64,000 nucleotides of DNA, from NCBI GenBank assembly GCA_004431415.1, contig QPMI01000071.1:372001-436000 (forward strand), read 5' to 3'. A program made the position numbers and the translations under genes. This DNA comes from Cyanophora paradoxa CCMP329 (taxonomy: Eukaryota > Plantae > Glaucophyta). Positions 13,565-64,000 of the stretch are shown here, piece by piece. How positions within the stretch are numbered: the first letter of the stretch is position 1; every line of letters begins with the position of its first letter. The notes under the pieces were generated by a model, which saw only the letters and a list, made by a program, of their open reading frames with translations, was not told where the DNA came from and searched no databases.

Positions 13565-13750
13565 CCGCCCTGCGCTCGGCGATGCCCATCTTCGTGGGGC
13601 AGCTGCGGCTCCTGCTGGGCCTCCCCCCGCTCGACCCGGCGCTCTCGCCCTACGCCCGCTCGGACGCCCCGCCGGCCCCGCCGGCCCGGCTCCTGACCTG
13701 CCCCGAGACCGCCATCTGCGACTGGGAGGTCAACGTCCTCGCCCGCGGCC

Positions 13751-13782
<32 letters not shown>

Positions 13783-15212
13783 TCCCTCCGCTCCCTCACA
13801 GCCCTCTTTGACCAGCAGAAGAACATGGTACCCCGCTCGCATCCCGTACCCCCCGCCGCACTTCTCTAAGGCGTACCCCCCCAGGTCGTCGGGGACCACA
13901 TTCGGAACGTCTGCGACCTCGCAATCCAGCAGCTCCGCGACGTGCGCTGCCCCGTAACCCCTCCCGATGCTGTACCCGCCCGACCGCTCCCCTTCTCCCG
14001 TCCCGCAGGCCCGCGCGGCGGTGGCGTCTCTGGACCCGCGGACGGCCCTCGGCGTCGCCCTCTCCGCCGCCCGCCGCGCCCTCGTGGTGCGATAGCCGTA
14101 CCCCTCCTTTCTTCTGCCCCCATCTAATCGCGTACCCCCGCAGGCCTCGCGGGAGGCGTTCTTCGACCCGACGATGCTCGGAATGATGTACTTCCCCGAC
14201 GAGCACAAGGTACCCCCCGGCCCCCGCCCCGCCCCCCTCCTCCCCCCGTTCCATTTGAAATCCGTACCCCAGGCGGCGGTCTACATTCCAATCGCGCTGC
14301 CCGTGGCGATCCCGATTGTGACGGGCTTCGTGAGGCAGCTGCGGTACCGGCGGGAGAAGCTCCGCAGGAAGGCGGCGGAGGCGGCGGCCAAGGCACAGGC
14401 CGACGCGGCGGGCGGGGACGCGGCTGGCGCGGGCGCGGGCGTCGGCGCTGGCGCGGCGCCCTCTGCGGAGGCGCGGCCGGCGGCGCCGGCGGCGGCGGCA
14501 GCGAAAGCGGCGGGCAGGGGTGTCGCGGGCGAAAACTGCGCCGCTAGAGGCGCGCGGGCTCGACTCCGGAGCTGGACATTGATCCGGAGGGCGAGCGACG
14601 GCCTCAGCATACATATATAGCTATACCCCACTTAGCTAGGGCTCCCCTGGAGGGCCCTCTGGGCGATAAACCAATTTGCAACGGCCCAGGAGCGGCGGGC
14701 CTTTGTTTCCCTTCATTCCCCTTCTCTTATTCCCCCCCTACGTCGCCGACGTCATTCTTCATATATGTCGTATATAGTTCGTACGGCGTCTTATGATAGG
14801 CCTCCAAGGAGCGTCATAAGCTTCTTGTGGACTCTAGCCGTGTACATGTGTAGGACCCTGTATAAAAAGTAGGACTGCCATACATTCTGGGAGTCTGCTT
14901 ACGTAGGGCGAAACTCTGTCGGATCAAATATACGGACTATACCTGCAAGCTACTCGAGCCGCTACTTGCCTAAGATCTAGAGCTGTCACGGGACCGAGCA
15001 CACTGCACTGCAGGTCAGATAAACCTCTGTTGGGTCTCAGTCTGCATACCCCTAGACAATGCATTATAAGGGGACTAGTACTTGAGTAAGGGGACTAGTA
15101 CTTGATGCTTAACAGGGGCGAGGCTGCGCGGCGCGCGGGGGCGCCCCCGGCGGGGGCCGGAGCGGGGCTCTCGCGGCGAGCGGCGGGCAAGGCGCCGGTG
15201 GGCGCCGGGTAG
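13565..15212 (+). pseudogene. PIGS: 3' fragment of GPI transamidase subunit PIG-S, interrupted by a solo LTR
   Basis: AALRSAMPIFVGQLRLLLGL...AFFDPTMLGMMYFPDEHK|AAVYIPIALPVAIPIV matches the PIG-S/Gpi17 C-terminal signature. The last exon breaks at 14520, resumes at 15115 and runs to TAG at 15210-15212. The 5' exons are absent. Confidence 0.85.
14521..15114. mobile_element. Solo LTR (594 bp) with 4-bp target-site duplication GGGG
   Basis: Begins TGT, ends ACA, and is flanked by GGGG on both sides. Removing it plus one GGGG restores the PIG-S codons KAAG(R/K)GEAAR seen in the intact copy. Contains TATAAAAA at 14861 and a 20-bp tandem duplication near the right end. Confidence 0.8.
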
Positions 15213-16155
15213 CCGCGGACCCTGGTATAGAGCCCTGGCTTAGGACTTGGTATAGAGCTCTTGCTTAGGTGCCCTCTCCTTCGATAATTATAATTGCACA
15301 TGCGCATGCATATGCACATGCATCTGCTTTCATCTGTAACTGCGCATGCTGATCGTGATTAAAGTGATCATGCATATACTATGATATATGATCGATTACG
15401 CAACGTGCTCGCAAATTTAAAATCAGGATCTAGGCGCGGCAGATCTAGAGCAGTCTAGACAGAGGGAAGGTGGGGGAGTGCGGGGGAAGGGGGCGGGGGG
15501 TTCCGGCCATGGTGCGGATCCGGATGCGGCCGATCGGGTGCCCGCTTTGCTGCGCTCTACGTATATATACCCTCTGCCCGCCGCGCATCCCCGTATACGC
15601 TCTTCTGGGCCACCTGCACCCCCTTTCCATGCATTTGGCCACCTTATCGATATCCAGCGCCACCCTGGCCCCACCTCTTCCGATCCGTCGACGTCGTCGA
15701 CCTCTTCCGATCCGTCGACGTCGTCCTTCCCTCCCCTTTCCCCCGCCCCGGCGCGTTGATTCACCGCCCACGCCCACGCCCCCCCCCCCCCCCCCCCCCA
15801 CCCCTTCTGGCCCTCCCCGGTCCCCCTCTTCGCTTTCTCCCCCGCGCCCCAAGGCCTTCCTTCCAGGCGCCAGCTTTCCTGCTTCACGCAAGCGCAGCTT
15901 GTACCCGCGTCCGACCTGCGTGACCAGATCTAGAAGCGGCACCCCCCGTTCTGCACAGGCGTCGCAGATCTAGTCCGACGGTCCGGAAGCAGCAGTGGCC
16001 GTGCTCATTCCGTACTCTCCTCGAGAGGTATACGGTATAGGTTTACCCATTTTTGATGTTGATTTGATTAATGGTATAAATGAGGGGGGCCGCAGCCGGG
16101 GCGGGGAGCGAATTCCGAATTTGCCAATGCCGGGCTGGCGTTCGTAATATTTACA

Positions 16156-18788
16156 TTATTGCGGGACGAAATCTTCGGACGAAATTGACTCCACATCCTG
16201 CGCAGACAGGACACGATGTTATATTTAGGCTCGCCATGCACATACATGGATTGGGCTGCAGCCGGAGTGGTGCGGCGAACCCGGAGGTAGGAGGTGGAGA
16301 TGTGCAGGTCGGTGGCCCAGTCCTCCTCCTCCAGAACATCGTACTCGTTCGCATCCATGTCCGGCTCCGCGGCTTCCTGCACGACTCATGTACACGCTTA
16401 CTATATTGGTCGCTTACAGGGGTCGTGCTTTACTTTCGCACGAATCGGTAGACTCGCAATTGCAAGTTTGCACCTGGGTTTCGGAGTCTAGGTGATAGTC
16501 TTGGTATTCGATGCAGCCAGAGCGAAACGTCTCCTTGCATGGTCCCCCCCAAGCGGGACATTGCTCCACCCTCTGCCGGACACCGCAGGGCCACCGCAGA
16601 TTATAATACTACGAAAGTAGTTGAGCGGCATATATACGTACTAGTATGTACTTGTTCCCTGGGCCCCCGCACCTGCGTGCAAGCGGGAGGAACGGTGAGG
16701 GAGTCTGGATTTGCTCATGACCAAAGGCCGCGGGCGACGGGGAACGAACTGGGCCGGATCTCCCACCGTAAATTTATGGTCTTCGCACCAAAGGTCGTGG
16801 TAGCAATCAAAATGGAACCGCTCCTCCACGCTGCAGTGCACGGGGTCGGAGCCACATCGCATCAAGATCGGCCGCAGCGCTAGCGGGCGGCCGTGCACGT
16901 GGCCGCGGGCGCCGAGCAGTGCCACACCAGGGTGTGCAGGGAATGTCGTCTGGTGCGCCGAAACTTTTTGTCTCGAGTGTGAAGCTAGGGAATTGCAGCT
17001 TGAACTTGGCTTTGGCGAGGTTTCCCCAGTCATATGTACTCTCCCATTCGTCGAATTTGTATAAGTAGGGATCCGTAATCGTGGTGGCTGAGCGCATGCA
17101 GGCCGCCTCGATTTTGTCCCACGGGACAGGGGCTGGTGATTCACGTAGGATGTGGCTAACTTGTAGGACGCCCCCGCTTGACTCGTCAGCGATGTCCACC
17201 ACCAGACTCACGAGCTCCTTCGCCTCCTCCTCCGTCAGGTTGCCATCCGCCTTCTCGGTCTCCCATTTCGATTTCTGCGCTTGCCCACGCCGGTGCACGC
17301 GTTCAATTGAAGTGGGAACATAGCATCGATAGTTATATCGATCGATATACATCATGGTCTACTAGCTATAGGCTATCGTTCAATAATATAGTCTATATAT
17401 CATATATATATATATATATTTGAATCATAGCTTCGCATCAATAATTCTATATCTTCTATAGCTATGATTGATTATAAGGCTCTACGAATTCGGACAGCGC
17501 GTGGCCATGTTTACCGCTGGCCATGTGATCTATTGTTCTATGCTTTTGGCGAGCGCGCGGGTACCGCCGCAATGAACTTCTCGTTCTGCTGAGCCGCCGC
17601 ATCCCCGAGGTTCTTCGTGACCTCCGCCATGGTGTGCTGCGCCTTTTGCATCGAGACCACATCCTCGAGCGCCATCATCCCCGCCCCCTTGTTGATGAGC
17701 GTTGCGATCTTGGCCTCCTTTTCGGTCCGCGCGAGCTCCGCCGCCGTGTTAGCCGCGCATGTGTCCGAGGCGAACACGCGCAGGGTGTTGACAGCGTGGC
17801 TGGCCGAGCGGCAGATCAGGGACTGGAGTGCGCACGCGGAGCCTCGGAGCCCTGTCAAAGGACTCGGGAAGTAGGGCACCATGGCTCGCAATCTGCGATT
17901 TGGGTAGCTGTGCCTCCTTGAAGAAGCTTGGCGATGTACGAGTAGGCCCTGGGATGGGCGCAGGCGGTGGTGACGAGCTCGGGCGTGCCTGCCTGCAGGG
18001 CTCCGTAGATGTAACGCGGCGGCAAAGCTGTCGTACTCGACCATGTCCCGCAATTGGGAGCTGCGGAATAGCTATACTCGTCTCCCATGGGTTCAGGTTT
18101 TCCGCAGCCTATCACGCCAGGTCCGTAATCGTAGTCGAAAGTACAGTGGTACGGGTAGACTGCCGTCACCGGCGGGCTGTCCAACAATTGCAAGTCTTGG
18201 ACAGATTTAGATCCAACATATATAGCAGCCTGAGGGCGCACCAGGGGGTGCAGGCGGCGGTCGTGCCTCCAAAATTTCCCTTCGACAAGTAGTAGGCGGC
18301 CCCTTCCGTGCCCGATCTGCCGCACGCGTCGGCGAGGGTTTCGTTCGTGAGCTGTCCAGTAATCGTCTTTGTTAGAAGCGGAGTCCCGCTGCAGCCTGTT
18401 GCCGGGTAAGTTTCAATAGTAGACAGCGCCGGGCTGCGGGCCGGGCGAAGCCATGATCAGAACGCATGTACGTGTGCATGCGGTGCTGGCGCTGCTGATG
18501 ATCATATGCATGATGCACACCATGGCGAGCAAGCCCATTTCGTCCCATAAGTGTCGCCCGCGTCTTTTACGGAATTGTAGTTGGAGACGCCCAGCGTTGA
18601 GCACACCTGCACGCCGGGCGAGAGTTCGAGAGTTCACGCGTATATATGTATACGCGTATACGCGTGCAGATACGCACCGCGATTTTGTCTTGCTCTGTGG
18701 CATAGTTTTTGATCGAACGAGTGATTTCCGCTGTCCCGGAGCAATCGGCGCTCTTCCACCCGCTGACTTTCGACCCAGTTGTGCCCAT
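16156..18788 (-). CDS. Novel Cys-module protein A: N-myristoylation motif, CxPC repeats, helical insert, acidic tail (about 10-11 exons)
   Basis: Spliced by hand: MGTTGSKVSGWKSADCSGT...KIA|VCSTLG...WACSPC|PALSTIETYPATGCSGTP...AACTPC|PPVT...YSAAPNCGT...ADCEPC|HAVNTLRVFASDTCAAN...FIAA|KSKWE...DIPCTPC|VEERFHFDCYHDLWCEDH...|EAAEPDMDANEYDVLEEEDW...YLR|DVESISSEDFVPQ*. Junction phases are consistent. The stretch 16470-16780 is ambiguous (possible indel). Confidence 0.7.
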
Positions 18789-18972
18789 CGCAAATTTATA
18801 CGACCGCCAGCTACACACACTGACGTCGACAGTCGCTCAGCTAGATCAGTCGATCGCAAACTTATGCCAGTAAGGCATATGCTTTCCGTCCTAGCTGCAT
18901 GTATATATCTAAGATCCTAACTTAGTAACTAAGATCCGGCGCGGATCCTTAGTAGATTCCGTACTAGTACTA

Positions 18973-19174
18973 CTGTAGGACGGCTTTTTTATAGCTAAAT
19001 TAGCTGTAGTTTTAAATTGCCGTAAATTGCCGAGAGGCCGAAATCTGCAATTTAGCATCACGGCAATGTAGCTGGGGGTAGGTGATTTCTTTGGCCGCCA
19101 TAGAGCGGACGTCTGGACTCTGGACTCGGCAATTTATCGCCACGGCATTTATCGCAATTTAAGCAATCCTACAG
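18973..19174. mobile_element. MITE family 1, copy a (Tc1/mariner-like, TA target-site duplication)
   Basis: TA|CTGTAGGA...TCCTACAG|TA. The internal sequence (tgccgtaaattgccgagaggccgaa...ccgccatagagc...cggcaatttatcgccacggca) is homologous to 54797-55016. Confidence 0.75.
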
Positions 19175-19528
19175 TAAACAACTGGTCCGTCTGGACACTT
19201 CGAAAAAATTCAAACAACTGGCGCCGACTCGAGCTCTGCATGCAGCTGCGCATGCCGGCAGCCGACTCATTGCCGAGTCATTGCCGAGTCAATGCCGACT
19301 ACGGTAACCCTCATGATCAGGGCCAACTAAGTATATAGCTACTAGTACTACGGTAGTAGCCTAGGCTCAGCGCCGAGTCAGCGGCTGCCTAGTACAGTCT
19401 GTACAGACTGTACAGTAGCTTCGTTTAAAGACTGCAGTTTTCAAGTTTCAAGCCTTGAATTTGAAGTTTACCACATGTGCACGTGAACATTAAAATATTG
19501 TGTAAAACTTTCAAGTTTTACAGCACTA

Positions 19529-19820
19529 CCGTGTAAGACTTAAATACCGCGTCACAAATTAGCGCGTTCCAAAAATTTGGGCCCGATTTGCGCTTTACCG
19601 CGCTACCAAATTACCGCGTTCCATCGTCTTCGAAAATGTATTATTTGTTAGCAAAGGGGGTAATACTGCGCTACCAAATTACTGCGTTCTAAAAATTTTG
19701 AGCGCGGTAATTTGGCAGCGCGGTATTTTTTTTGGTGAATTACCGGCCACAGTCTCTAGACACCAGCACTGCGGGGGCTGCCCGGTAGTTAAGTCAGCGC
19801 GGTATATAAGTCTTACACGG
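19529..19820. mobile_element. MITE with 23-bp terminal inverted repeats (CCGTGTAAGACTTA(A/T)ATACCGCG)
   Basis: The inverted repeats match at 22 of 23 positions. Left flank is TA, right flank TC. Internal direct and inverted subrepeats taccgcgctaccaaattaccgcg. Confidence 0.75.
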
Positions 19821-20726
19821 TCGTAGTACATATATGTATGCGAAGTCTAGCTAGGATACCTAGTACTCGTTTGATTTTCGAAAAAATTAAACGCTCGAAG
19901 GCTCTTTCCCGGTCACGGCCGACTCACGGGTACTGGTATATTATGCCATGAATCCCGGCATCCCGGGGGGCCGGGAGCCCGGGACTCCGGGAGTCGGGCC
20001 GGGGCCCGGGAGTCCCGGAACTCGGAAGTTGCCGCCGAACTTGCCGGAACCGGACCGTGACGGCCCGGGGGCCGGGACTCCGGGAGTCCGGGAGTCCGGG
20101 ACGTGACGTCGACGGGCCGCGGCCGGGACAGTCACGGTCGGCGGGACTCCGCCGGGTCGGGACTCCCGGGCCCGGGCCGGGAGGCACCGCCGCCGCCGCC
20201 CGCCGGCATGCGCAGCCTCAGGGCCTGGCAGTGCGGCAGTACTAGCTATACTAGTGCTGCCGCTGCTGCGGCACTGCTGCCAGGCTGTACCGTGAGTACC
20301 GTGACAGACACTGACAGTGCCGCACTGCAGCCGCAGTACTAGTGCGGTTCCGAATTCGAATTCGAAGTTCTACTACGTATACGCTGCCTACGCAGTGTAG
20401 TACCGTAGTACGCACACGGGACGTACGGTACGTAACAGTACTACGGTAGGCTGGAGCTCATCACTGAGTCATGCATGATCAGCGGCGAGCGGTCGAGTAC
20501 CGGTAGTAGAGTACGCCGCGCCTCTCCGCGGCCTTTCCAAGTTCCGAAGTTGAGCGCGAGCGGCAAAACTGCACATAGACCCACTGGTAACACACACATG
20601 TACACGTATATATACGTACATGTATACGTATTAGCCAATAGATCTAGATTAGGGTCCTTTAATTTGAACCCCTTCGTTGAACCCCGGCCCGCGCAGGTTA
20701 CCTAGGCCTGGTAACTCCCGTCGAAC

Positions 20727-23700
20727 ATGGGAGCCGATCTTTCAAAGTTCATCAAACCTTCGCCGGCGAGGTGCTACGATGCCGAGGACTGTAAAGGATC
20801 AATACGTATCTCGCGCACGGACACGTAAGTACATAGCACGATATATTATGAAGAAGTACACTTGTACGTGTGTGTCTGTTCACTCCTTGCGTTCCGCACC
20901 GCGCACGCAGTAACGCGAACGTGATTTCCCTCTGCTCGGACCCCTCGCACATCTCTGGCTATCAGCGAGGAAGCGCATCCTGCGTGCCTGCCAAACTGCT
21001 CTGCTACGCCTCCAGGTGATCGCGATCGATTCGGCTTCGAGCATGCGCAATTGCTCTTGCCGACATTCGCCCTTGTTCACAGCGATTGCTCTGGAGCGTT
21101 CACACTTGGAAAAGATCCGGCATCCGGCAATCTGGTCACTCATTAGTGCGCGCGCGCTTGGCCGATTCCGTGGCCTTCCAGAGGTAGTATACTCCAGTGT
21201 CGCTCAAGCTTATAATTACGAATTGCGCGTACGCAGCCAGCCTACGGGAACGTCCGACGCCGATGCATTCGCCCGTTGCCCTGCAGCGCTGTCGTACAAG
21301 AACGGAAACGACAACACATGCCGCCCTGCCCAAAACTTTATTGCATGTCACAAGGACTGGAACTGCAAGAGTACCGGAAGCGACGTCACTCATGTACTGG
21401 GAGAGGACCCGTGCGCCATCGTTTGATTCTCTGATTTGTGCCCGCGACGCCGGCCACGGCCACGACCGATTGCGCACTTCGAATTCTCACTTTACTCTCC
21501 CGTCGTTTGCAGCGCCAAGTGCCCTGCAGTTACTGCGAGCTGGAGCCTCAACGGGAACGGGAACTGCAACCCCCGGGCCCTCATGTGCTTCTCCGATAGC
21601 CAATGCACGAGTACTCCGACGGTCCCCCGAGACGCGGCCGGCAATCTCTACCCTCTGTAGTGCGCTTGGAATTGCGAGGTTTCTTGGGCGCGCTGAACGT
21701 TTAGCTCGCACTCCGTTGCAAAAGCCAGCAGCTGGGGCAGCGGTTTCCGATTGCAAAGATTAACTGCACCTGTCTTGCAGCCAGCCGACGGGTCTCTCGG
21801 ACTACGACGCGTGGCTCCGTTGCCCGGACGGGTGCGAAAAAACATATACATATAATGAAGGGAACACTTCAAATGCGCACGTATTGCCTGGTTTTGTGCT
21901 TCTCGAGAGGTCACATCGATATCGCGATCGGCAGGACGCAAGCGTTTAAAGATGCGACGTCGCTCCGATGCAACTCTGGAGTAAAGAAAGGCGGAAATTG
22001 CTACCAGGTGAATAAAGATTGATGCTTGCTTATATATGAACTGGGCAGCGCCCGGCGCCCCGACACACCTCACAATTGAATGCGATGGCAATATTAATTA
22101 TATATAATGCGTCCTCGCACCCGACACACGTGGTGTCTGACACACGCGCGCGAACGCATGTATACGTACAGAGTTTCAATTGCTCATCAGTGGATCCGAC
22201 GGGCTCTGACGTCACCCGCGCTTACGACGCGTATGCCATGCATTGCATATAACATGCCTTCTCGGAATGCTATCTCTGACCAGTCCGGATCCGTGCACGT
22301 GGCTGACTTTGCAACTGCGCGTGCGATCGTCATTAGTTCAAAGTGCCCGGATTCAGCGAACTCGTTCAAAAAGGACGGAACTTGGGTATGCAAAGCGGCG
22401 AGCCTGCATTGCTTTAGCGATACGTGCGCTATTTGTTCGGCGTCCATTCGACAGCGTCGAAGATGACAGCCGCGATCGATCGACGACAGGGCGTGCAAGA
22501 CTTCGCCGACAGCTGGAAAGGACGCCATCGGGAACAACGTTGAGCTGTAGTGCGCATCTTCGAACTCTAGATCGCACGTGATTAATATTTCTATCAAGTA
22601 TCAGCGATCGCCGCGAATTATAGGACTTGTACTCGTCTCTGACCGGCACGCTTCCAGCCAGCCTGCCGGGGTCACAGACGAGGAGGCCTGGGGGCGTTGT
22701 CCGGTGTGCTACAGCTAGCGCTCTAGAACTAAATGTTTTCCATCACACAACTCTTCTTGAAAGTCGTTGAAACGGTTCTGCTCAGCCTGGCACCCATACG
22801 TTCATGGAAATGGATTCTACTTGGTGCAAAGCTGCCATAAAAGGGACTGCCTGGTACTTGAGCTTATACAATATGCATTTGTTTGCTTTTACGACTTTAT
22901 TTTCCCCACTTATAAAGTCAACTATATGCTTGTGATGTTTAGCCAGAAGACGTACGAGTTAAACTTATTACATATCAAAGTAGTATCCAGCGCTCGTCCT
23001 TCGAATTCATCAGTATTCAGCTGCAGCGATGTTCTCAACGCTCTCCGTGTGCAGTTAGCGCTATCTACAGCTACTCGGTTCTCATCCATTGCACCTGCGC
23101 GCAGCTACTCAGACCTGAAGTGTGGCTCCACTCCCACTTACGTCTTCGACAAGTCCAAGTGTCCGGCTGACACTCTGGCCGTGCGTAACTACAATGCATA
23201 TGCCATCTGCGCCTCGCGCCGCTGAGCTCGTGTTTGTCTGCATTCCTGATGCTGCGCAAATATATGCTACAGATAATATCGAACGATATTAACAGTGGAA
23301 GATGCACTGCAAGCAAGCTCGTCTGGTGACCTTAAAACAATTTTCTAAAGAAATGTAGGCGATACGTATACCCGAACTTAAGTTCAAGCGCGCAGCTTTG
23401 CGGACGCTTTGTGCGGCGGCGTTCCCACTCTTGGAAAAGATCCGGCATCCGGCAATCTGGTCACTCATTAGTGCGCGCGCGCTTGGCCGATTCCGTGGCC
23501 TTCCAGAGGTAGTATACTCCAGTGTCGCTCAAGCTTAGAATTACGAATTGCGCGTACGCAGCCAGCCTACGGGAACATCCGACGCCGATGCATTCGCCCG
23601 TTGCCCTGCAGCGCTGTCGTACAAGAACGGAAACGACAACACATGCCGCCTCGCCCAAAAATTTATTGCATGTCACAAGGACTGGAACTGCAAGAGTACC

Positions 23701-26700
23701 GGAAGCGACGTCACTCATGTACTGGGAGAGGACCCGTGCGCCATCGTTTGATTCACTGATTTGTGCCCGCGACGCCGGCCACGGCCACGACCGATTGCGC
23801 ACTTCGAATTCTCACTTTACTCTCCCGTCGTTTGCAGCGCCAAGTGCCCTGCAGTTACTGCGAGCTGGAGCCTCAACGGGAACGGGAACTGCAACCCCCG
23901 GGCCCTCGTGTGCTTCTCCGATAGCCAATGCACGAGTACTCCGACGGTCCCCCGAGACGCGGCCGGCAATCTCTACCCTCTGTAGTGCGCTTGCGAGGTT
24001 TCTTGGGCGCGCTGAACGTTTAGCTCGCACTCCGTTGCAAAAGCCAGCAGCTGGGGCAGCGGTTTCCGATTGCAAAGATTAACTGCACCTGTCTTGCAGC
24101 CAGCCGACGGGTCTCTCGGACTACGACGCGTGGCTCCGTTGCCCGGACGGGTGCGAACCAACCCAATGAAGGGAACGCGTGAAACCGCGTTGGCTGTATT
24201 GGGGCTTATGATTCTCGAGAGTTCACATCGATATCGGCAGGACGCAAGCGTTCAAAGATGCGTCGTCGCCTTATTGCAATTACAGAGTCAAGATAGGCGG
24301 GAATTGCTACCAGGTAATCATTATCAGCGCTGGATGCTTTAGGATCATTATATATATATAACTACATGCATATGCATATTTACAGTTTCATGGTTCCCGA
24401 ATATTAATGGACGACGCATCCTTGCACCACGTGCACGTGCATGATATCCAGACCTGACACGCCTTTTGCTCGTCCAGAGTCTTGATTGCACCTCCACGGA
24501 TCCAACGGGGGCTGACGTCACCCGCGCGTACGACGTGTAAGCCATGCATAAGACGGCCCTATCGAGATCCGAAGTGGTATTCGTAACCAGCCCATGCGCA
24601 TGTGATCGATCTCAGCACGAGGTGCCCGGCTTCGGCGAACTCATTCAAGCAAGATGGCAGTTCGGAGTGCAAGGCAGCGAACCTGCTTTGCTATAGCGAC
24701 ACGTGCGCAGATTCTCGGTTTCCTTATTGCCGTCTGTCAAAGAGACTGCTTCTGAATCCGTGACAGGAAGTGCAACTCTTCGCCGACATCTGCAAAGGAC
24801 GCTCTCGGGAACGCCGTTGAGCTGTAGTGCGCATTTAATTTGCGTTTGTGGTATACTCAGTCTAAAGTGCTCGAGCTCGCGTTATCTACCCGCGGTCTCT
24901 TCGAACTCGTCCCTTGTTGCCGTTGCCGGCTCTGACGCGCGAGATGCTAGCCAGCCAGCCGGAGTCACAAACGAGGAGGCCTGGGGACGCTGCCCGGTGC
25001 GCTCTTGCACATGCATGCTACATATGTGCAGTGCATTGCTCTTGAGAAAGCATTGTTTGTAATTACATTCGCGTACGCTGCACATTTCCTGCTCAGCCTG
25101 GCACCCAAGCGGTCAAGGAAACCAATTCTTCGTGCAAAGCCGACATTCACAAAGGGACTGCCTGGTGAATATTGTTATCGCTTTAATGTCGCTGCCTGCA
25201 CTCTGATCACATCGATCGCACCTGCGCGCAGTTACTCAGACCTGAAGTGTGGCTCCACTCCCACTTACGTCTTCGACAAGTCCAAGTGTCCGGCTGACAC
25301 TCTGGCCGTGCGCAAACACACAACGTAATGAGCTAGCTGTATAATGTCATGTAGCTGTGCACACACGAATTCTACGCTGAGTTTTGCTGTCGGCATCTCT
25401 AACGTTAACCGTACCCTTTTACAAATCTTTCAGGTCGTTGCAAAGAATGAAAGGGATCCCAATTACGGTGTTTGTATGCCGCAAAAGCTCGTCTGGTAGG
25501 CCATTGACTTCACATCCAAGGGGCTCCGTACTGATCCGGAGCAGCTATTCGAGCAACAACTGCTCGGATGCCGGAACAATTACGAGCTACGATCAGTAGT
25601 GAGCCCGCGCATACGCATTCCGTTCATGGCCGGAAGGGTTCGTGTTGTATTTGATGTCATCTTACGACCTCATCACAGCCAGCCAGCTGGAGTTTCAAAC
25701 GAGCAAGCGTGGGAGCGCTGTCCGGTGCGAACGAATGCCTAGACCCGGTTTTATGGACTCTACGTGATACTGATCCCACATTTCTAGATCGGCACCCGGG
25801 CGATCAAAGAAGCGAATTCTACCGAGTGCCGCTACAGCTCCACTCTGGACCTGGGCTATTCCTGGTAACAAACCTTGTTGACAATACCAATTGATATCGA
25901 GATACATGCCCGCTTGCAGCTACTCAGACCCAAATTGTCGCTCCACTCCCACCATTGTCTTCGACAAATCGAAGTGCCCGGCTGGCACTGCAGCTGTGCG
26001 TGCAAAAGTCCTCGACCCCTTTCCTCGTCGGCTACCACTCTAATGATATAACCCTTTTGCAAATCTTCAGACCAGTCCAAGGAGTCCAATGGAAGCCAAC
26101 TTCAATGGTTGCTTGCCAGCAAAGCTCGCCTGGTAGGCTAGACTATATATTTCATATCAAAAATTAATATTCAACTAATCTGGAGCAGCTTTACGACTTC
26201 CGATTGCTCGGATGCCGGAACAGTTACCAGCTACGACCAGTAGTGAGCCCGCGCCTTCCAATCAAAATTGAAGCACTGATTATTATATTCGCGCATATAA
26301 TCTTATAATATAATTAGAACGTTGCGTTCACGGAAATCTGACGTGTACATGTACAGCCAGCCAGCTGGTGTCACAAACGAGCAAGCGTGGGAGCGCTGTC
26401 CGGTGCGCTCGACTTCGAATTCCTAGACCTGGTATAGCTTTTCTCGCCTCCGCGATGGATACTGATCCCACATCTCTAGATCGGCACCCAAGCGTTCAAG
26501 GAAGCGAATTCGTTCGGATGCAAGAACTACAACCTCCAGTATGGAGTTGCCTGGTATTCGTTAATTCAAGCTTTCGATATCGAGAACTTCAGCTTGCAAA
26601 TTGCAATTGTAGCCATAATATTCATGTATGCATATGCCTGCGCGCAGCTACTCGGACCTGAAGTGCGGCTCCACTCCCACCATCGTCTTCGACAAATCGA

Positions 26701-29700
26701 AGTGCCCGGCTGGCACTGTAGCTGTGCGTACGCGTGCGCCAAATCATCGAAGTGCCCGGCAGGCACTGTCGCTGTGCGGTTGTGTGAAACTTGACACTTG
26801 CATCTCGCATGCTCTTAATTGTTTGAAAGATTCGATCGCGAACTCGACAATCCTGACCATAACTACAGACAGCTTCAAGACACGCTGGGGGAATCCAAGG
26901 ACGGTGCTCGATAGCCAAGCTCGCCTGGTAGGCAAGACAGTGCAAAATACCGGTATCACTGCGAATTTCGAAACTGATTCGACGTGGCAGCTACATGAAC
27001 AAGGATTGCTCGGACTCCGGAACAATCACCGAATACGATGACTAGTGCGTTGACGCCCTGCATTGCAACTGCATTTTGAATTCGACTTTGTTACCAACAC
27101 TTGTGCAGCCAACCGGCTGGGGTCACGAACGAGCAAGCCTGGGCACGCTGTCCGGTGCGAAATTATTTGAATAAAAAGGCTCATTCATGATCATCGAATT
27201 GGCACTTAAGCTTGTAATTGTGCTCACGATACATGTATTTTTTTCAGCCTGGAACAAAAGCGATTCAGATCCCCAACGACTACGTGCAGTGCCGAACCTA
27301 CCCAACACATTATATCCACTGGGGCACACCCTGGTGATTGGTTTATTAAGAGAATCGCTAGCCACATAAATACAGAGGAAGATAATTGCATGCGCATTGT
27401 CAACCTTGTCCGTACTCGCGCCCGCGCGCAGCTATTCCGACTTGAACTGCACGTCTACCCCCACGTACGTCTTCGACAAGTCACAGTGTCCTGCAAACAC
27501 ACTGGCCTATGGCGTGCGTGAAAGTCAGCTCCTCTGGAAAATCGATCAGCGGTTAAGAATCCTATCTCGCAGAAGCTCTTATATAGCGGCCAGTACCAAT
27601 GCACCACAGCCAAGCTCAACTGGTAGCTGCAATATTGATTCCGATTGCGCCGGCACCCCAGCCTGGCCCGCTTCAAAATTTCGCGCCTCGTCTGAACCGG
27701 AATATGTATAGCTTCTCGAACGCAGACTGCTCGGGTTCCGTCACGACAACCAACTACGAACGCTAGTGCGCTTTACGCTCTTTTCATGATCACTATAAAT
27801 CATGAACCATGGAGGGACGGACGGCGCCCTGAAATTTAGATTGCCGCCTTTTGGTTTTACAGCTATAAGTATACAGCGAAGGTTATATACATATCTGACC
27901 AAGGTCTCATAGTCACGAATACCCCATCTCGGCTGAAGAGGCGTGGAAGCGCTGCCCCGTAAGTTGCTCTACATTGCGGAAACATTGTCCGAATTCCCAG
28001 AAATGACGCATGCTCACATACACGCGTACGTGTAAAATATCATTCCAGCTCTCCACACTGTCTGTGAAGAACGGGAACGAGGACTCGCAATTGTGCACGA
28101 AGTTATCGAACACTTATCTGGGCAATGTAACTGAATGGTATGTGGACGTGTTATGCATATGCTCTCTCAATTGTAGCTGCATATGCACATGTATTTCTAG
28201 ACTGTACCAAACAACGGACTCGCGTGCAGCTACTCGGATTTGCAATGCTCCACGACCCCTACAATCGTTTTCGACAAAACAAAATGTCCGACAGGCACTG
28301 TAGCGACACGGGTGCGCCGACTTTGCTTCACGCGAATAGCGCGTCAATCGATCGCGCCATTTACGTATCGAATGCTGCAGCCGTATACGAAAGACGACAG
28401 CGGGGTCTGCACCACATACAAGCTCACCTGGTAGCTAATTAATATAAAGCATAAGTTATTTTCATATTTAAATTCAAGCTCAATGTTGATCTACCAATAT
28501 CGAAATAGCTTCTCCGGCAAAGATTGCTCGGGAGAAGCCACTTTCACCAGCTACGACAAATAGTGCGCACGTTTGCGCCTGTTGGTTACGAAAGCAAAGC
28601 CACATGCTGAACTCCTGAACAGCCAACCAGCCCCGTATGTGGACTACAGCACTTATAGCTATCCGCCAAAGACAATCAGCGTCAGCGACGACGAGGCCAT
28701 GCGGCGTTGCCCTATGGGGACGCAGTCCGTCAAGGAAGGCGGCACGCCCACCAGTCAGTGCAAGACCAGCGGCGTGCACATGGGCGTTCAATGCTTCGTG
28801 AGCACATGCATATGCGCATGCGCATGCGCTGCCACGCATTGCTTCAGCCTTCGACTCATGATCATCGCTTCAACCTTTGCAGTCGGACGCCGAGTGCAAG
28901 ACGGGCGGGGCGTGGCAGGTTTCGATGTGCGTGCCGTTCCACGTTCTCGTACGCGTGCTGGCGTCCCCGGGGCCGGGGCCCACGTGCATTCGCATGTATA
29001 TTTATTATTCGACAAATTAGATTAACTGAAATCGCTTGCGCTTTCTTATAGATCTTCTATTGCTAAATGTATTCACGTTTTTCTTGCGCAGCGAGAAGTG
29101 CCCCTTCGACACGACCCAGTCTGTGCTCCCGGTCCTGTCCCCGACCTGCTTCTCTCGCGGCGATAACTTGCGTTTGCCGAGTGCTCTCGCCGAGTGGTGC
29201 GTTCTCGTATGTAGCTAGGTATAGCTCAAAATTTCTCCGGATCTTCCACGGGGCACTCCACCCCCCTTCGAAAATTCCCACTCCTCCTCCCCTCCCTCCC
29301 TCCCTCCCTCCCTCCCCCCCCCCCCCCCCCCCCCGCCTCCACTTCCACAATGAATGGGCCTTCTCCGATCGCAGTTACACGAAGCCGAACTGCGAAGGGA
29401 CTGGAGTATTGACGTTCAAACAAGGCGTCGACAAGTATTTTAAGTCGGTTCCTTGTCCGAAGGGTTTGCACTTGCACACACGCATCCGCCGCGCCTCGCC
29501 TCCTCGTCGAACGTATTTGAATCGGTATCGTATATATACGTAGGTACTACGGCATCGCACAAGATTTACCATGAACAAGGCACAGCGTTCGGGTGCGAGA
29601 ATAGGGCGATGTGCTTCCAGAACGAATATTGGTGAGCTTGAAATTAAAACATGTTCGAGAACTTCTCGATCGCCGTACGCGTACGGGTTGCTCCTTGCGA

Positions 29701-31058
29701 TTGATGATTTCCGATGCAGCCGACCTACATATCTGTACGGAACCCTTGATGGACCGACGAAGCCCCCCGTTTACGGAGAAACAAGACACGTGGACACGTC
29801 AGTGAACTTTGCTTTACGTTTGCGCGCGTTGGCTCGACTGAACGGCTCCACTAACCGCGGCTCTCCTCTATTCGTACTTGGCAGGTTTACGTGCAGTCAT
29901 ATGAACGAGCGTGATATCGATGGCGTGGCATACATAAAAGAAGAACCAGTCGGCGGCGTCGCAGCGAAGGCCGGCCCTCTCTTCGGGCAGACGGAGTACG
30001 GTCCCTGCCAACGGGTCGCCCCCAGATGCTATTTACAGGTGGGTGTTTTTTTCGAATATATTCGCCGGTTTCGGCTGCGTTACATTGGCCGGTACCGTTC
30101 GAAATTCGAAATGCAGGCCAATTGCGAAGGCGGACCACTCTATGGGACTTCCAGGTGCTCGAAGATTACAATTACGTGAACGATTTCGTCATCGCTGTAA
30201 CGATCCTAACAATATTGCAGCGCTGCGTATGTTATGTCCATGTGGAAGCAAGGTGGTTTTAATTTTCTTGCTTCATCTTTTATTTAAGAGCTCAAACGGA
30301 TGCTGCCTGGATCCCAATCCCAAGGCAAAATTCTCCCGAACAAATTTGTCGTGTGCTCCAAGGGTATGCAAAGTTATATGGAATTCCAAAATGAAGAGTG
30401 TCAAAACTTCGTGCGTGTCCTCGATATTTTGGCTATCTGTGCCTCGGAGAGAGCTTAAGCTCAAGTGTCGAGCGCGTGCGCGCAGACGTTCCCGAACCGC
30501 CTGGACGCCAATGTCGCCGTCGTTGAAGAGGACAGAGCGCTCGAGGTGTGCGGCGCTTTCGTCCCCACCGCCCCCCCCCCCCCCCCACCCCACCCCTCCC
30601 CCCTACCCCCCCCCCACACACACACACCCACCCTTCCACCCCTTCCCAAAGCTAGAGAAAGCTAGAGCTAGACCCCTCATATATAGCCCCGTATATAAAG
30701 GAGGGGGAGACTCTGAGACCCTCGGATCGAGAGGTTGTGTCACATACCTATATCTAAGATCGTGCTATATCGAAATAATCGAGCTAGATCGAAAGAATTT
30801 ACTATATCTAATTATATGTAATTATATATATAAGATCCTGTATCTAAGATCGAAATAAATGGAACGCGCGCGCAGGATTCGGAGATGGACTGCGATTTTG
30901 ATGACGACTTCGAATGCGATGCCTTCAGCTCGCCTTCAGCTCACGACCACGAGGCCGAGGTGCGGTCCCTGTGCTTTTATAATTAAATAGCTGATTTGCA
31001 TCTGACTGGGTTTACGTGGGATGGGTGGCTGCAGACATGTGCTGCACTGGACGCGTAG
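20727..31058 (+). CDS. Novel Cys-module repeat protein B: about 60 exons, about 1,500 aa, about 11 tandem ~105-aa eight-Cys dyads, N-myristoylation motif, acidic tail
   Basis: ATG at 20727 (MGADLSKFIKPSPARCYDAEDCKGS) with an in-frame TAA at 20712. A continuous phase-consistent GT-AG exon chain repeats QPAGVxxExAWxRCP|xGTxAxKE..C..C|YSDLxCxSTPTxVFDKSKCPAxT|..C..KLxC|Y/F....CSxxGT..YDxY. It ends ...LDANVAVVEEDRALE|DSEMDCDFDDDF...|TCAALDA* at TAG 31056-31058. The terminal exons are less certain than the repeat exons. Confidence 0.8.
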
Positions 31059-31768
31059 AGAAACTTGAAAGGAACTGCGCGCGGCATATATATGCTGCGG
31101 ATCGGCGGCGCCTTCTGAATTTGTTTCTAGGATAGGGCTGTTTTCTAGTCAGTTGCACTTGTACGTATACATTGCAATTGACGTCGACGCGTCATATACA
31201 CATTCGTGCGCGCACTCGCGACTGCTCAGCGGCTATCGCCTCTCCAGAAAAGAGGATGGTGCGGGGCGAGGATTTACACGTCCACGTGAGAGATCTAGAC
31301 GTGCTTTGCTTTTGATTGGACTATTACTGCGGGGAGAGGGACCGCAAGGGATTGGTGAAGTCAATACGAAGGCCAAATGATCATGATCACCGTCGACAGT
31401 ATTGATGCGGATCCCGACGGCAGAAATGATCATGACAGCGGATAAGATCTAGAGGGGCGGGGACGGAAAGGGGAATGAAAGGGATGGTGTGGATAGATCT
31501 AGAGATCTAGAGCGCCCTGCGGCAGCCAACGGATGGATCCGGATAGGCCAGAGTCCCCCCGCCCACCCGTGCCTCCCCCCCCCTCCCCTCCCTTTCCCTG
31601 CCCCCCTTCCTTCTGTCTAGACCGCTCTAGATCGGTCTAGACCTACTATGAATATGCGTGCACGTGCACGTGGCTCTGTGAGTCAGTAATCATGATAAAT
31701 TCAATCAGCAGTTACAGATGAGAGCATGCAAATACCGAAGGAGAGGGCAACTGCGCAAAAGCCCGCAG

Positions 31769-32598
31769 CTACCCGGCGCCCGCCGGCGCCTTGCCCGCCG
31801 CTCGCCGCGAGAGCCCCGCCCCGGCCCCCGCCGAGGGCGCCCCCGCGCGCCGCGCCGCCTCGCCCTTGCCCGCCGCTTTTGCCGCCGCCGCCGCCTCCGC
31901 CGCCGGCCGAGCCTCCGCGGAGGGCGCCGCCCCGACGTCCGCACCGGCGCCGGCGCCCGCGCCAGCCGCGTCCCGCCCGCGCCCGCCGCGTCGGCCTGCG
32001 CCTTGGCCGCCGCCTCCGCCGCCTTCCTCCGGCGCTTCTCCCGCCGGTACCGCAGCTGCCTCACGAAGCCCGTCACAATCGGAATCGCCACCGGCAGCGC
32101 GATCGGAATGTAGACCGCCGCCTGGGGTACGGGTGTCAGGCGGATGAGCGGGGAGAGGGGGGCGGGGCGAGGACCGGGGGGTACCTTGTGCTCGTCGGGG
32201 AAGTACATCATTCCGAGCATCGTCGGGTCGAAGAAAGCATCCCGCGAGGCCTGCGGGGGTACGCGATTAGATGGGGGCAGAAGAAAGGAGGGGTACGGCT
32301 ATCGCACCACGAGGGCGCGGCGGGCGGCGGAGAGGGCGGCGCTGAGGGCCGCCCGCGGGTCCAGAGACGCCACCGCCGCGCGGGCCTGCGGGAGGCGGTC
32401 GGGCGGGTACGGCATCGGGAGGGGGGTAGGGGGCAGCGCACGTCGCGGAGCTGCTCGACTGCGAGGTCGCAGAGGTTCCGAATGTGGTCCCCAACGACCT
32501 GGGGGGGTACGCGTAAGAGACGGGCGGGGGGGTACGGGATGCGAGCGGGGTACCATGTTCTTCTGCTGGTCGACGAGGGCTGTGAGGGAGCGGAGGGA

Positions 32599-32630
<32 letters not shown>

Positions 32631-34385
32631 GGCCGCGGGCGAGGACGTCGATTTCCCAGTCGCAGATGGCGGTCTCGGGGCAGGTCAGAAGCCGGGCCGG
32701 CGGGGCCGGCGGCGGGGCGTCCGAGCGGGCATAGGGCGAGAGCGCCGGGTCGAGCGGGGGAAGGCCCAGCAGGAGCCGCAGCTGCCCGACGAAGATGGGC
32801 ATGGCCGAGCGGAGGGCGGCCCGCGCCTCGGACTCGGGATCGGTCCCGTTCGGAACGTGCGCGAGGGCGAGGCCGCCCCAGCCGGGGACCAGAAAGGCCC
32901 CCTCGGCCGAGAGGCGGCCGCCGGGCAGGCGCAGGTGCAGCGGCGAGCGCGCCGCCGACGGGACGAACGCCACGAAGTGGACCGGGGGGTCCAGCGTCAG
33001 CGCCGAGTCGAGGTTCCAGCTGCGCACACCCCAGGGATCGCAGGGGTACGGGGGCAAGGGAAGCGAGGGGGACGGCGCACGCGTTGGCGTCGAGGACGAA
33101 GGGGAGGTGCTCGGCCTCGAAGACGTACCCCCCGAGGGCCTCGTCACGCGTCGGCTCGCGGGCCCAGTGCACGTGCCGCAGGACCTGAGGGCCCGGGGGG
33201 GAAGAGTTAGGGGGTACAAGGCTTCATCCTGGGGGTACACCCGCCTGGGTGTCGAGGGTGAAGGAGGCAACGGGGGCGAGGGCGTTCAGGATGCCTCCGA
33301 AGTAGGCTGTGAGGGTACGGAGGCGTGGGCGTGGTACACGGTCGGGGCGCGCGGAGCCGCCGCACCGTCCGCGAGGGGACCAATGGCGGAGAGGGCGCGG
33401 GAGTGGGCGGGGGTACGCGAGGATGGGTCTTCGTCGAGAACGGACACTGACACGCGGTACGAGTCCGCGAGGCGAATCGACCGGTCGCGCCCCGCGGGGC
33501 TCTGGGGCGGAGGGGGGTACGCGTCAGGGCCGCTTGGGGGGTACAGACAGCCCGCGCGGGCCGTACCTTGGTGTCCGGGGCGCCGACGAGCGGGATAAGG
33601 CGCTCCCATGCGAAGCGCGCGCAGGCCTGGAGCGCGGCGTCGACGTTCTTGTACCCTGCTAAGTCGTGAGCGGCCAGGCGCCGGCGGCTCGCGAGTCGAG
33701 GGGCGCACCGTCCGCGAAGACCCAGCCGTGGAGCTGCCGCCCGGCGCGGAGCAGGCGCCACGGCGCGCTGGGGTCCGGGTCGGGCCGCTCGAGGAGGAAG
33801 AACGTGAACGAGTACTGCGGGCGGACCAGCGGCCCCAGCGCCGCGTCCACCGCTGCGGGCGCGCGGGCGGTCGGCGGGCGTGACGGGCGGCGGCGGAAGC
33901 GCGTGGGAGCGGCCGCACCGTCGTCCGTGTCATCGTGCGCGAAGCCGGGCGGCTCGTCTGCAACCCGCTCGTCGACGTTGACGTCGAGCTCCAACGCCGG
34001 CTGCACGCCCGGCGGCCGCGACTCCCGGAGCACTTGCACGAAGTGCTCATCGTCCTTGAACGCGCCCGGCGGCCCGCCGCCGCCTCCCCGTAGCCGCACG
34101 ATTTCGATTGAGAGCGGGACGGTCATCGGGGCCTGCGAGCGCGCGGTCGGGGGCTCGCGCGTCTGCGAGCGAGCGGAAGCGGCGGCTCACCATGCGGCTC
34201 AGCTCGTCGATCGCAGCGTTCGGCAGCGGGGCGCGGTGGATCTTCGTCGTGTGCCACCAGACGACGACGGACACGAGCAGGGCGCCCATGTAAATGCAAG
34301 CTATGGTGGACCGCTTGCCTGCGCGCCCCGACCGCTTCAGCGCTCCCGCGGCGAGCGCAGCGGGAGTGCGATGCCACGAACCCAT
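31769..34385 (-). CDS. PIGS: GPI transamidase component PIG-S (Gpi17), full-length copy
   Basis: N-terminal TM followed by WWHTTKIHRAPLP, internal FLVPGWGG, C-terminal AFFDPTMLGMMYFPDEHK...VYIPIALPVAIP TM. One apparent 1-nt indel in the Ala-rich tail (about 31975), probably a sequencing error. Confidence 0.88.
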
Positions 34386-34568
34386 CTTGAGGTAGCTGCT
34401 GTATAGATCGACGGTGGCTAGAACAGCTGTCGGGCCCGCAGACCAGGCGAACGGAGAGGGGGGGCCAGCGAGCGGCGAGCCTGGTCGCGTCTCAACGTAC
34501 CCCCAGCCGTCTGTACCCCCCCCAACGAGAAGCTCGCGGAAGCTGCCAAGCCCAGGCCCGGCTTTACA

Positions 34569-37072: not shown

Positions 37073-37345
37073 CCCCCTCGATCTAGTCCCCCTCCCCTCC
37101 CCCCCACCCCCCTCTCTTTCGTGCCCCTCGGCCCGCCCGCCCGCCCCATCCCGCCCCGCTTTCGCCCCTTTCCCTCTCCGCCCCCCCGCCCCATCGAACC
37201 GTAGGTCGCTCGTACGTAGTGCATATCCGAATTCGATTACCACACCGGATCTATCAGTTTCCGAATTCCGAATGTGATTCGATTCGTAGTGCATATCCGA
37301 ATTCGATTCGTAGTGCATATCGATTCGTAGTGCATATCCGAATTC

Positions 37346-37798
37346 GATGAGCGGGGAGAGGGGGGCGGGGCGAGGACCGGGGGGTACCTTGTGCTCGTCG
37401 GGGAAGTACATCATTCCGAGCATCGTCGGGTCGAAGAAAGCATCCCGCGAGGCCTGCGGGGGTACGCGATTAGATGGGGGCAGAAGAAAGGAGGGGTACG
37501 GCTATCGCACCACGAGGGCGCGGCGGGCGGCGGAGAGGGCGGCGCTGAGGGCCGCCCGCGGGTCCAGAGACGCCACCGCCGCGCGGGCCTGCGGGAGGCG
37601 GTCGGGCGGGTACGGCATCGGAGGGGGGTAGGGGCAGCGCACGTCGCGGAGCTGCTCGACTGCGAGGTCGCAGAGGTTCCGAATGTGGTCCCCAACGACC
37701 TGGGGGGTACGCGTAAGAGACGGGCGGGGGGGTACGGGATGCGAGCGGGGTACCATGTTCTTCTGCTGGTCGACGAGGGCTGTGAGGGAGCGGAGGGA

Positions 37799-37830
<32 letters not shown>

Positions 37831-39584: not shown

Positions 39585-39770
39585 CTTGAGGTAGCTGCTG
39601 TATAGATCGACGGTGGCTAGAACAGCTGTCGGGCCCCGCAGACCAGGCGAACGGAGAGGGGGGGGCCAGCGAGCGGCGAGCCTGGTCGCGTCTCAACGTA
39701 CCCCCCAGCCGTCTGTACCCCCCCCAACGAGAAGCTCGCGGAAGCTGCCAAGCCCAGGCCCGGCTTTACA

Positions 39771-42268: not shown

Positions 42269-42503
42269 CCCCCTCGATCTAGTCCCCCTCCCCCTCCCCC
42301 CCCACCCCCCCTCTCTTTCGTGCCCCTCGGCCCGCCCGCCCGCCCCATCCCGCCCCGCTTTCGCCCCTTTCCCTCTCCGCCCCCCCGCCCCATCGAACCG
42401 TAGGTCGCTCGTACGTAGTGCATATCCGAATTCGATTACCACACCGGATCTATCAGTCAATCAATCAGTCTAGCGAGCTACGAGAGAGATTCACCCTGCC
42501 GCT

Positions 42504-52822: not shown

Positions 52823-52854
<32 letters not shown>

Positions 52855-54796: not shown

Positions 54797-55016
54797 CTGT
54801 AGGCGTAGTTTTTTAGCCGTGGTAAATAATTGCCGTAAATTGCCGAGAGGCCGAATTCGGCAATTTATACGTAGCACCACGGCAATTGCTTTGGGGTAGC
54901 GGATTTCCTAGACCGCCATAGAGCAGAAATCTGGATTCGGCAATTTATCGCCACGGCAATTCCAGGTTGGGCGGATTCGGCAAATTAACTCCACGGCAAT
55001 TTAACTACGCCTACAG
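54797..55016. mobile_element. MITE family 1, copy b (terminal inverted repeat CTGTAGGCGTAGTT, TA target-site duplication)
   Basis: Perfect 14-bp inverted repeats flanked by TA. Internal homology to 18973-19174. Confidence 0.82.
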
Positions 55017-63998: not shown

Positions 63999-64000
63999 TC

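What the first reader, a model, noticed from the sequence alone, without database searches (positions are those of the whole stretch)
16156..31058. Candidate undescribed family: divergent pair of N-myristoylated, 4-Cys-module proteins with a shared acidic tail
Two genes that the ORF track shows only as fragments point away from each other. Both begin with a textbook myristoylation motif (MGTTGSK, MGADLSK) followed at once by a related module (WKSADCSGT / YDAEDCKGS). Both are built of modules with an aromatic-x4-Cys motif and an S/A-x-K motif after the first Cys. Both frequently split a Cys codon TG|Y with a phase-2 intron. Both end in a similar acidic motif (MDANEYDVLEEED / LDANVAVVEED). Neither shows a signal peptide or TM segment. 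Regular Cys spacing usually implies secreted disulfide domains, whereas MGxxxS/K implies cytosolic membrane anchoring. They may therefore be metal-binding or acylated cortical/flagellar scaffolds, or unconventionally exported proteins (inference). I do not recognise the module as a known family.
Basis: partly seen in the sequence, partly recalled or inferred. Interest (0 to 1): 0.85.

Follow-up and report, generated by a model that had tools for sequence, protein, structure and literature searches.

The report
Lipid-tagged cysteine-repeat algal gene pair
Two real, spliced, head-to-head genes of the alga Cyanophora paradoxa encode chains of an undescribed four-cysteine module that looks like an outside-the-cell disulfide domain, yet both start with a membrane lipid-anchor signal instead of a secretion signal; what they bind and where they go is untested.

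Summary
Mostly confirmed. Gene A (minus strand, 11 exons, 538 aa) has all ten introns shown in spliced contigs. Gene B (plus strand, 60 exons, 1515 aa) models as one open frame; RNA was checked only for its 5' part. In-frame stops precede both start codons in the transcripts, so no signal-peptide exon is hidden. The only relative found among 1.84 billion proteins is a Cyanophora paralog (59% identical to B), which also keeps a myristoylation-type start. B holds 26 modules with exactly four Cys each, with conserved and variable exons alternating. A holds five modules (4,4,6,4,6 Cys), one split by a ~100-aa helical-looking insert. No Pfam, NCBIfam, PDB, Atlas or viral match; folding failed. Corrections: A-B kinship is only moderately supported, the shared acidic tail is not significant (p 0.17-0.56), and S/A-x-K lies at its slot in 13 of 26 B modules. 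Best reading: myristate-anchored, disulfide-type multivalent binding arrays, conditionally expressed. The scan had noted this stretch and a similar 32-module gene elsewhere in this genome.

The parts
16156..18788 (-). Gene A coding span, 11 exons (18788-18678, 18606-18521, 18433-18242, 18176-17880, 17799-17565, 17274-16928, 16830-16750, 16672-16642, 16572-16474, 16376-16281, 16197-16156), 538 aa, 24 Cys
   Evidence: All 10 introns GT-AG, seen as joints in runs X8 and X1 (9 of 10 in X2), absent from the unspliced control run X4
18768..18788 (-). Gene A N-terminal myristoylation-type motif (MGTTGSK)
   Evidence: PS00008 match; 5' exon unspliced up to 18913 with in-frame stops before the ATG
18789..18913 (-). 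Gene A 5' UTR (minimum extent), with two upstream ATGs and in-frame stops
17880..18767 (-). Gene A modules A1-A3 (4, 4, 6 Cys), each ending in CxPC
   Evidence: A1 vs A2 local score 78, 0 of 3000 shuffles; A2 vs A3 p 0.008; Cys counts
17161..17756 (-). About 100-aa Ala/Glu/Lys/Leu-rich insert inside module A4 (spans intron 5); helical or coiled-coil by inference only
   Evidence: Read from the model; heptad a/d hydrophobic fraction 0.53-0.55 in two registers; no Pfam match; not folded
16474..16830 (-). Module A5 (6 Cys), the most B-like module of gene A
   Evidence: 0 of 1000 shuffles reach its score against the B module profile
16156..16376 (-). Gene A acidic tail (45 aa, 15 D+E, no Cys)
   Evidence: similarity to B tail not significant
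18914..20696 (.). Intergenic stretch between the divergent starts; holds repeated elements (very high DNA depth near 18860-19859) and about 190 nt of B 5' exon sequence inferred to lie in 20260-20659
   Evidence: exact 5' joints of B were not shown in the output
20727..31058 (+). Gene B coding span, 60 exons, 1515 aa, 107 Cys, all introns GT-AG, one open frame
   Evidence: RNA pieces, joints or loose ends support parts of exons 1-8 and 15-19; exons beyond 24313 are modelled only
20697..20747 (+). Gene B first coding exon start: acceptor, two in-frame stops, then myristoylation-type motif MGADLSK
20772..30410 (+). 26 four-Cys modules of gene B, alternating short (43-51 aa for the first 12) and long (53-75 aa)
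   Evidence: exactly 4 Cys in each of 26; short vs long profile probability 93.5%
21083..25495 (+). Internal tandem duplication of 12 exons (exons 3-14 vs 15-26), about 2.3 kb
   Evidence: 93% over the first 920 nt; pN 0.077, pS 0.202
23105..28562 (+). Five-exon cassettes: slots a and d conserved (76%, 72% aa identity), c intermediate (50%), b and e variable (29%, 31%), same phases in each slot
30486..31058 (+). Gene B acidic tail (55 aa, 18 D+E)
   Evidence: modelled, not RNA-checked
13565..15218 (+). Left flanking arm: 3' part of a PIG-S gene copy and downstream sequence
   Evidence: Pfam PIG-S; 91-94% identical, inverted, to the right arm
31763..32819 (-). Right flanking arm: PIG-S gene copy, inverted relative to the left arm
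   Evidence: Pfam PIG-S E 7e-27

Best explanation
What it is (about 0.85): two functional, conditionally co-expressed Cyanophora genes for signal-less proteins built from a lineage-restricted four-Cys module, B as a 26-module array grown by cassette duplication, A as a shorter, diverged relative (kinship about 0.7) with a large insert. How it most likely works (about 0.4): Met is removed and Gly2 myristoylated, tethering each chain to a membrane by its N-terminus; each module folds around two disulfides as a fixed frame showing variable loops, so B is a multivalent binding or coat-forming array and A a partner whose helical insert could oligomerise; the proteins reach an oxidising space (cell surface, alveolar or mucocyst lumen) by an acyl-dependent, non-classical route. 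Shown: gene structure, splicing, no signal peptide, Cys regularity, frame/loop contrast, purifying selection. Inferred: myristoylation, disulfides, export, binding, A-B partnership.
For: Splicing and upstream in-frame stops. PS00008 in A, B and the paralog P0001, whose N-terminus differs from B in length but keeps MG. Exactly 4 Cys in 26 of 26 B modules with no His replacement; A modules 4,4,6,4,6, so Cys are gained in pairs; 27 C-x5-C spacings in B. Cys kept even inside the variable exons. pN/pS about 0.38 in the internal duplication. Both genes present in the same three laid runs; 14 other RNA-like runs of the species label hold 0.00-0.03 of the words. Precedents for myristate plus disulfides or myristate-dependent export: poxviral L1/F9 and A16/G9 (10.1101/2023.01.19.524718), Mic19 (PMC6362269, title and abstract only), Leishmania HASPB (PMC3491706). 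Cyanophora has mucocysts, alveoli and two kinds of mastigonemes (PMC6704402).
Against: No protein-level data. HASPB export needs a palmitoylated Cys3; the first Cys is at 16, 16 and 8 here. A 1515-aa disulfide chain leaving without a signal peptide has no precedent that I found. N-glycosylation sequons are not enriched (8 vs 12.8 expected in B). Four Cys is also the count of a zinc site and A carries CxxC. No confident fold (pLDDT 32 and 51). No sign of positive selection at whole-module level. Absence from runs is not proof of silence.
Confidence: 0.4

Rival explanations
1. Cytosolic, membrane-tethered recognition scaffolds: the modules bind zinc (Cys4) or stay reduced, and B's variable loops sense intracellular ligands such as invader proteins, with A as the adaptor or effector of a head-to-head pair.
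For: Myristoylation motif and no signal peptide point to the cytosolic face by default; CxPC four times in A; sequons not enriched; head-to-head layout and patchy expression. Unchecked scan notes describe many lipid-anchored, immune-like genes in this genome.
Against: Pairwise Cys gains, no His ligands in 26 modules, C-x5-C spacing and Ser/Thr/Gly/Asn/Tyr-rich composition fit disulfide domains better; no signalling domain found in A or B.
Confidence: 0.27
2. Structural scaffolds of the cortex, flagella or mucocysts, where repeats give length rather than binding diversity.
For: Long repeat array, coiled-coil-like insert in A, acidic tails; Cyanophora has an epiplast and mastigonemes (PMC6212826, PMC6704402).
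Against: Not detected in 14 RNA-like runs, unlike what a constitutive skeleton gene should show; loops are variable in length and sequence.
Confidence: 0.13
3. A and B are unrelated Cys-rich genes that happen to be neighbours; shared motifs are generic to Cys-rich sequences. (Compatible with any of the location models.)
For: BLASTP A vs B best E 0.4; hhalign probability at most 6.6%; tail match not significant; split-Cys introns are not at the same position.
Against: A1 and A5 beat 999 and 1000 of 1000 shuffles against B profiles (15 tests run); N-terminal 65 residues align at p 0.006; both start with PS00008 plus Lys7; head-to-head and found in the same runs.
Confidence: 0.3
4. Domesticated giant-virus membrane proteins (L1/F9 or A16/G9/J5 type) or Mia40-imported mitochondrial proteins.
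For: These are the known settings where myristate and disulfides co-occur; Cyanophora carries giant-virus insertions (PMC12344493); the locus is a low-GC island (52-56% vs 70-72%).
Against: No TM segment; no Pfam match to those families; no relative in viral contigs or BFVD (weak model); dense spliceosomal introns; no twin Cx9C or Cx3C.
Confidence: 0.05

Closest known systems
Cyanophora paradoxa tig00020563_g11214.t1 (EukProt EP00741_P011606; P0001)
   Same: 59% identical to B residues 9-193, same module series, myristoylation-type start.
   Different: Unannotated 186-aa model; it stops where B has a Tyr codon split TA|C by an intron, so it is probably a truncated model of a longer gene (inference). 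Essentially no match to A (E 0.05).
WAP four-disulfide core (PF00095)
   Same: CP then C-x5-C with Asp inside; weak scores E 0.02-0.04 for two B exons.
   Different: Below the curated cut-off; no CC doublet, 4 not 8 Cys per unit, no signal peptide.
Leishmania HASPB
   Same: Repeat protein with N-terminal Gly2 acylation and no signal peptide (PMC3491706).
   Different: HASPB needs palmitoylated Cys3 and is not a disulfide array; no sequence match tested or seen.
Poxviral and giant-virus entry proteins L1/F9 and A16/G9/J5
   Same: MG start plus conserved disulfides without a signal peptide (10.1101/2023.01.19.524718).
   Different: They have TM segments and mostly helical folds; no match in Pfam, viral contigs or BFVD.
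Mic19/CHCHD3
   Same: N-myristoylated and imported through the disulfide relay (PMC6362269).
   Different: Twin Cx9C CHCH domain absent here; B is far larger.
Cys-rich surface repeat proteins of protists and algae (Giardia VSP, ciliate surface antigens, mastigoneme proteins); from my own knowledge
   Same: Tandem Cys modules with variable loops; CxxC in A, CP-x-GT in B.
   Different: Those carry signal peptides and TM or GPI anchors; no Pfam match here.

Membership tests
N-myristoylated proteins | Gly2 directly after the true initiator Met | tested here: met
   In-frame stops upstream of both ATGs in spliced contigs
N-myristoylated proteins | PS00008-type context (small residue at 6, no Pro at 7; Lys7 favourable) | tested here: met
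   A, B and P0001
N-myristoylated proteins | Myristate actually attached | not testable with these tools
   Needs labelling or N-terminal proteomics
Classically secreted Cys-rich surface proteins (VSP, surface antigens, mastigonemes) | N-terminal signal peptide | tested here: not met
   Best 10-residue hydropathy 0.10-0.70 vs 2.34 in a neighbour
Classically secreted Cys-rich surface proteins (VSP, surface antigens, mastigonemes) | C-terminal TM or GPI signal | tested here: not met
   Acidic tails, best 19-residue window about 1.1
WAP four-disulfide core | Pfam gathering score; 8 Cys with CC doublet | tested here: not met
   15.4 and 14.7 bits vs 20.8; no CC
HASPB-type dual acylation (SH4) | Palmitoylatable Cys at about position 3-5 | tested here: not met
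   First Cys at 16, 16, 8
Poxviral L1/F9, A16/G9/J5 | Family profile match | tested here: not met
   Pfam exon by exon; viral contigs
Poxviral L1/F9, A16/G9/J5 | C-terminal TM segment | tested here: not met
CHCH / Mia40 substrates | Twin Cx9C or Cx3C | tested here: not met
   A none; B three isolated Cx9C linkers, no Cx3C
Beta/gamma-crystallin-like Greek key (Cys variants) | Aromatic-x4-(aromatic or Cys)-x-Gly hairpin and later Ser-x-Lys; two-motif beta sandwich | tested here: inconclusive
   Motif resemblance and short/long pairing are suggestive (from memory); no Pfam or PDB sequence match; models too poor and fold searches list no crystallin
Zinc-finger (Cys4) domains | Metal bound by four Cys, usually two knuckles | not testable with these tools
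   One CxxC per A module, none in B
One family comprising A and B | Significant module-level homology | tested here: inconclusive
   A1 1/1000, A5 0/1000, A2 26-36/1000, A3 and A4 not significant; hhalign probability 0.9-6.6%, column-shuffle p 0.01-0.12

The most novel reading that the evidence does not exclude
Cyanophora uses N-myristoylation as an export or targeting signal for a whole class of large disulfide-rich arrays (and perhaps, per unchecked scan notes, its aerolysin-like proteins), and the A/B pair is an inducible, exon-cassette-diversified recognition system built on a new fold.
Probability: 0.15. Interest if true: 0.85.

Novelty: new variant of a known kind. Interest (0 to 1): 0.58.

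Why it matters
The genes are invisible to ORF-based annotation (A is missing from the protein collections searched; the one paralog on record looks truncated), so a module family of a key early-branching alga is undescribed. The conflict between a cytosolic anchor signal and an extracellular-type Cys pattern, kept in three proteins, gives a cheap, clear test of whether myristate can route large disulfide proteins out of an algal cell, or whether such modules work reduced or metal-bound inside it. The conserved-frame, variable-loop cassette layout also makes B a candidate natural binding scaffold.

Tried and rejected
Joined spliced proteins were built only inside local scripts, they were not sent to search or folding tools, so all database searches ran exon by exon or with the natural protein P0001, which lowers sensitivity. 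Pfam, NCBIfam, PHROGs: nothing above cut-off (weak WAP, Toxin_7, DUF3761 scores rejected). PDB sequence searches blank or noise. ESM Atlas features: no usable hit. Representative search with a mixed A/B exon profile, which scores the own models at 155 and 352 bits, found only P0001 and a Jatropha simple repeat (P0002, rejected). Word-index searches found only P0001 itself (49) or nothing; they see only similar-length proteins. Viral, metagenome and genome contig scans: nothing, except L002, a 20-residue chance match in a bacterial protein. AlphaFold: P0001 alone pLDDT 32; A exon 3 with three rows pLDDT 51 (hairpin plus helix); four fold searches gave only background. Fragment alignments of B exons on P0001 misaligned and were not folded. 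Shared acidic tail rejected as evidence. Positive selection not seen at module level. No paper names the paralog's contig.
Full report
Source. Scan notes call this genome Cyanophora paradoxa; the only protein relative found is an EukProt Cyanophora paradoxa model, which agrees. The pair lies in a low-GC island (52-56% against 70-72% either side).

Gene A. Contigs of three runs (X8, X1, X2) skip ten GT-AG introns (X2 shows nine) that the control run X4 does not skip. The spliced frame is 538 aa, ATG 18788 to stop 16156. The first exon runs unspliced to at least 18913 and has in-frame stops before the ATG, so MGTTGSK is the N-terminus. The protein has five Cys modules with 4, 4, 6, 4 and 6 Cys; the first four end in CxPC. 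A1 and A2 are clearly homologous (0 of 3000 shuffles), A3 likely (p 0.008), A4 only by pattern. A4 is interrupted by about 100 residues rich in Ala, Glu, Lys and Leu, which I read as helical (inference). A 45-residue acidic tail follows.

Gene B. Sixty exons with GT-AG introns give one open frame of 1515 aa ending at 31058. RNA was laid only on 16060-22050: pieces, joints and loose ends support parts of exons 1-8, and letters that differ from the first copy match the duplicated copy, supporting exons 15-19. The rest is a model, supported by its periodicity and unbroken frame. The contig covering the ATG exon includes two in-frame stops before MGADLSK; about 190 nt of further 5' sequence lies upstream by depth, but cannot extend the frame. 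B has 26 modules, each with exactly four Cys, alternating short and long, the two types homologous (probability 93.5%). In the middle, each short+long pair is encoded by five exons with fixed phases; slots a and d are conserved (76%, 72%), b and e vary in sequence and length (29%, 31%) but keep their Cys. Exons 3-14 are duplicated as exons 15-26, with pN 0.077 and pS 0.202, so the gene is under purifying selection. Eleven introns split a Tyr codon TA|Y, so the unspliced sequence reads TAG there; this hides the gene from ORF tracks.

The lipid-anchor claim. A, B and the paralog P0001 (59% identical to B 9-193) all match PS00008 and have Lys7. P0001 has a shorter leader than B yet keeps MG, the best evidence that Gly2 is selected. 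None has a hydrophobic N-terminus, whereas a neighbouring receptor-like gene at 55664 has an ordinary signal-like start. None has a Cys near position 3-5, so the HASPB dual-acylation rule (PMC3491706) is not met.

One family? BLASTP and profile-profile comparison of A and B are weak. Modules A1 and A5 score above 999 and 1000 of 1000 shuffles against B profiles, and the N-terminal 65 residues align at p 0.006, but shuffles do not keep Cys spacing and 15 tests were run. The acidic tail match is at chance level (p 0.17-0.56). I put common ancestry at about 0.7.

Relatives and fold. A mixed profile against 1.84 billion representatives found P0001 and one chance repeat. Pfam, NCBIfam, PHROGs, PDB, ESM Atlas, viral, metagenome and prokaryotic contigs gave nothing real. 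Models were low-confidence and fold searches uninformative. So the module is unmatched, but a known fold is not excluded; a Cys variant of the beta/gamma-crystallin Greek key remains an untested lead from memory.

Expression. Five non-genomic runs hold 0.26-0.34 of the words, about the exonic share; 14 other RNA-like runs with the same species label hold 0.00-0.03. Both genes appear in all three positive runs laid. This suggests conditional co-expression from the 1.9-kb intergenic stretch, but the tool warns that absence is not proven and the conditions are coded.

Mechanism. Strict four-Cys units, gains in pairs, no His replacement and C-x5-C spacing favour two disulfides per module; the start favours the cytosolic face of a membrane. 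I rank: myristate-anchored disulfide arrays that reach an oxidising space and bind multivalently (0.40); cytosolic zinc-bound or reduced sensor scaffolds (0.27); structural cortex or flagellar scaffolds (0.13); viral or mitochondrial-relay origin (0.05); the rest unassigned. Myristate plus disulfides without a signal peptide has precedent in poxviral entry proteins (10.1101/2023.01.19.524718) and Mic19 (PMC6362269), but membership in those families was tested and not met.

Novelty. The module family is undescribed in what I could search. The scan had already noted the cassette part of B (s1-554053) and a 32-module gene of seemingly the same type elsewhere (s1-570243). New here: RNA-backed N-termini without a signal peptide, Gly2 conservation in a paralog, and gene A. 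As a system it is a new variant of Cys-rich repeat arrays; interest 0.58, limited by orphan status and no functional data.

Noticed in passing
window 13565-15500 and 31576-32819: The A/B island is bracketed by inverted copies (about 91%) of the 3' part of a PIG-S gene, giving a mirror layout PIG-S, A, B, PIG-S; the arms are far more alike than A and B are. The left copy seems to lack the 5' part.
   Followed up: partly
window 32143-37258 vs 37346-42457; 51519-53573: A 5.1-kb tandem duplication at 99.6% identity holding PIG-S (recent duplication or assembly artefact), and a fourth, inverted PIG-S copy at 93%.
   Followed up: partly
window 23105-23180 vs 25232-25307; 21145-21830 vs 23470-24150: Some exon pairs or tracts inside the B duplication are 99% identical, third positions included, while neighbouring introns and exons are 60-80% alike: suggests gene conversion between cassettes.
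   Followed up: partly
window 55664-64000: Low-GC, intron-rich gene with a signal-like start and FN3 domains (receptor-like; already noted by the scan as FN3-TM-TIR).
   Followed up: no
window 19015-19150 and 54828-54961; 19525-19824: Short repeated elements upstream of both low-GC loci; a 300-nt element with 27-nt terminal inverted repeats and very high DNA depth sits between A and B (MITE-like).
   Followed up: no
window 26700-26780: A partial extra copy of the end of exon 35 with its donor lies in the following intron of B; possible alternative donor or duplication remnant.
   Followed up: no
P0001 (tig00020563_g11214.t1): The published model ends exactly where B has a TA|GT split Tyr codon, so it is probably the 5' fragment of a longer gene.
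   Followed up: no
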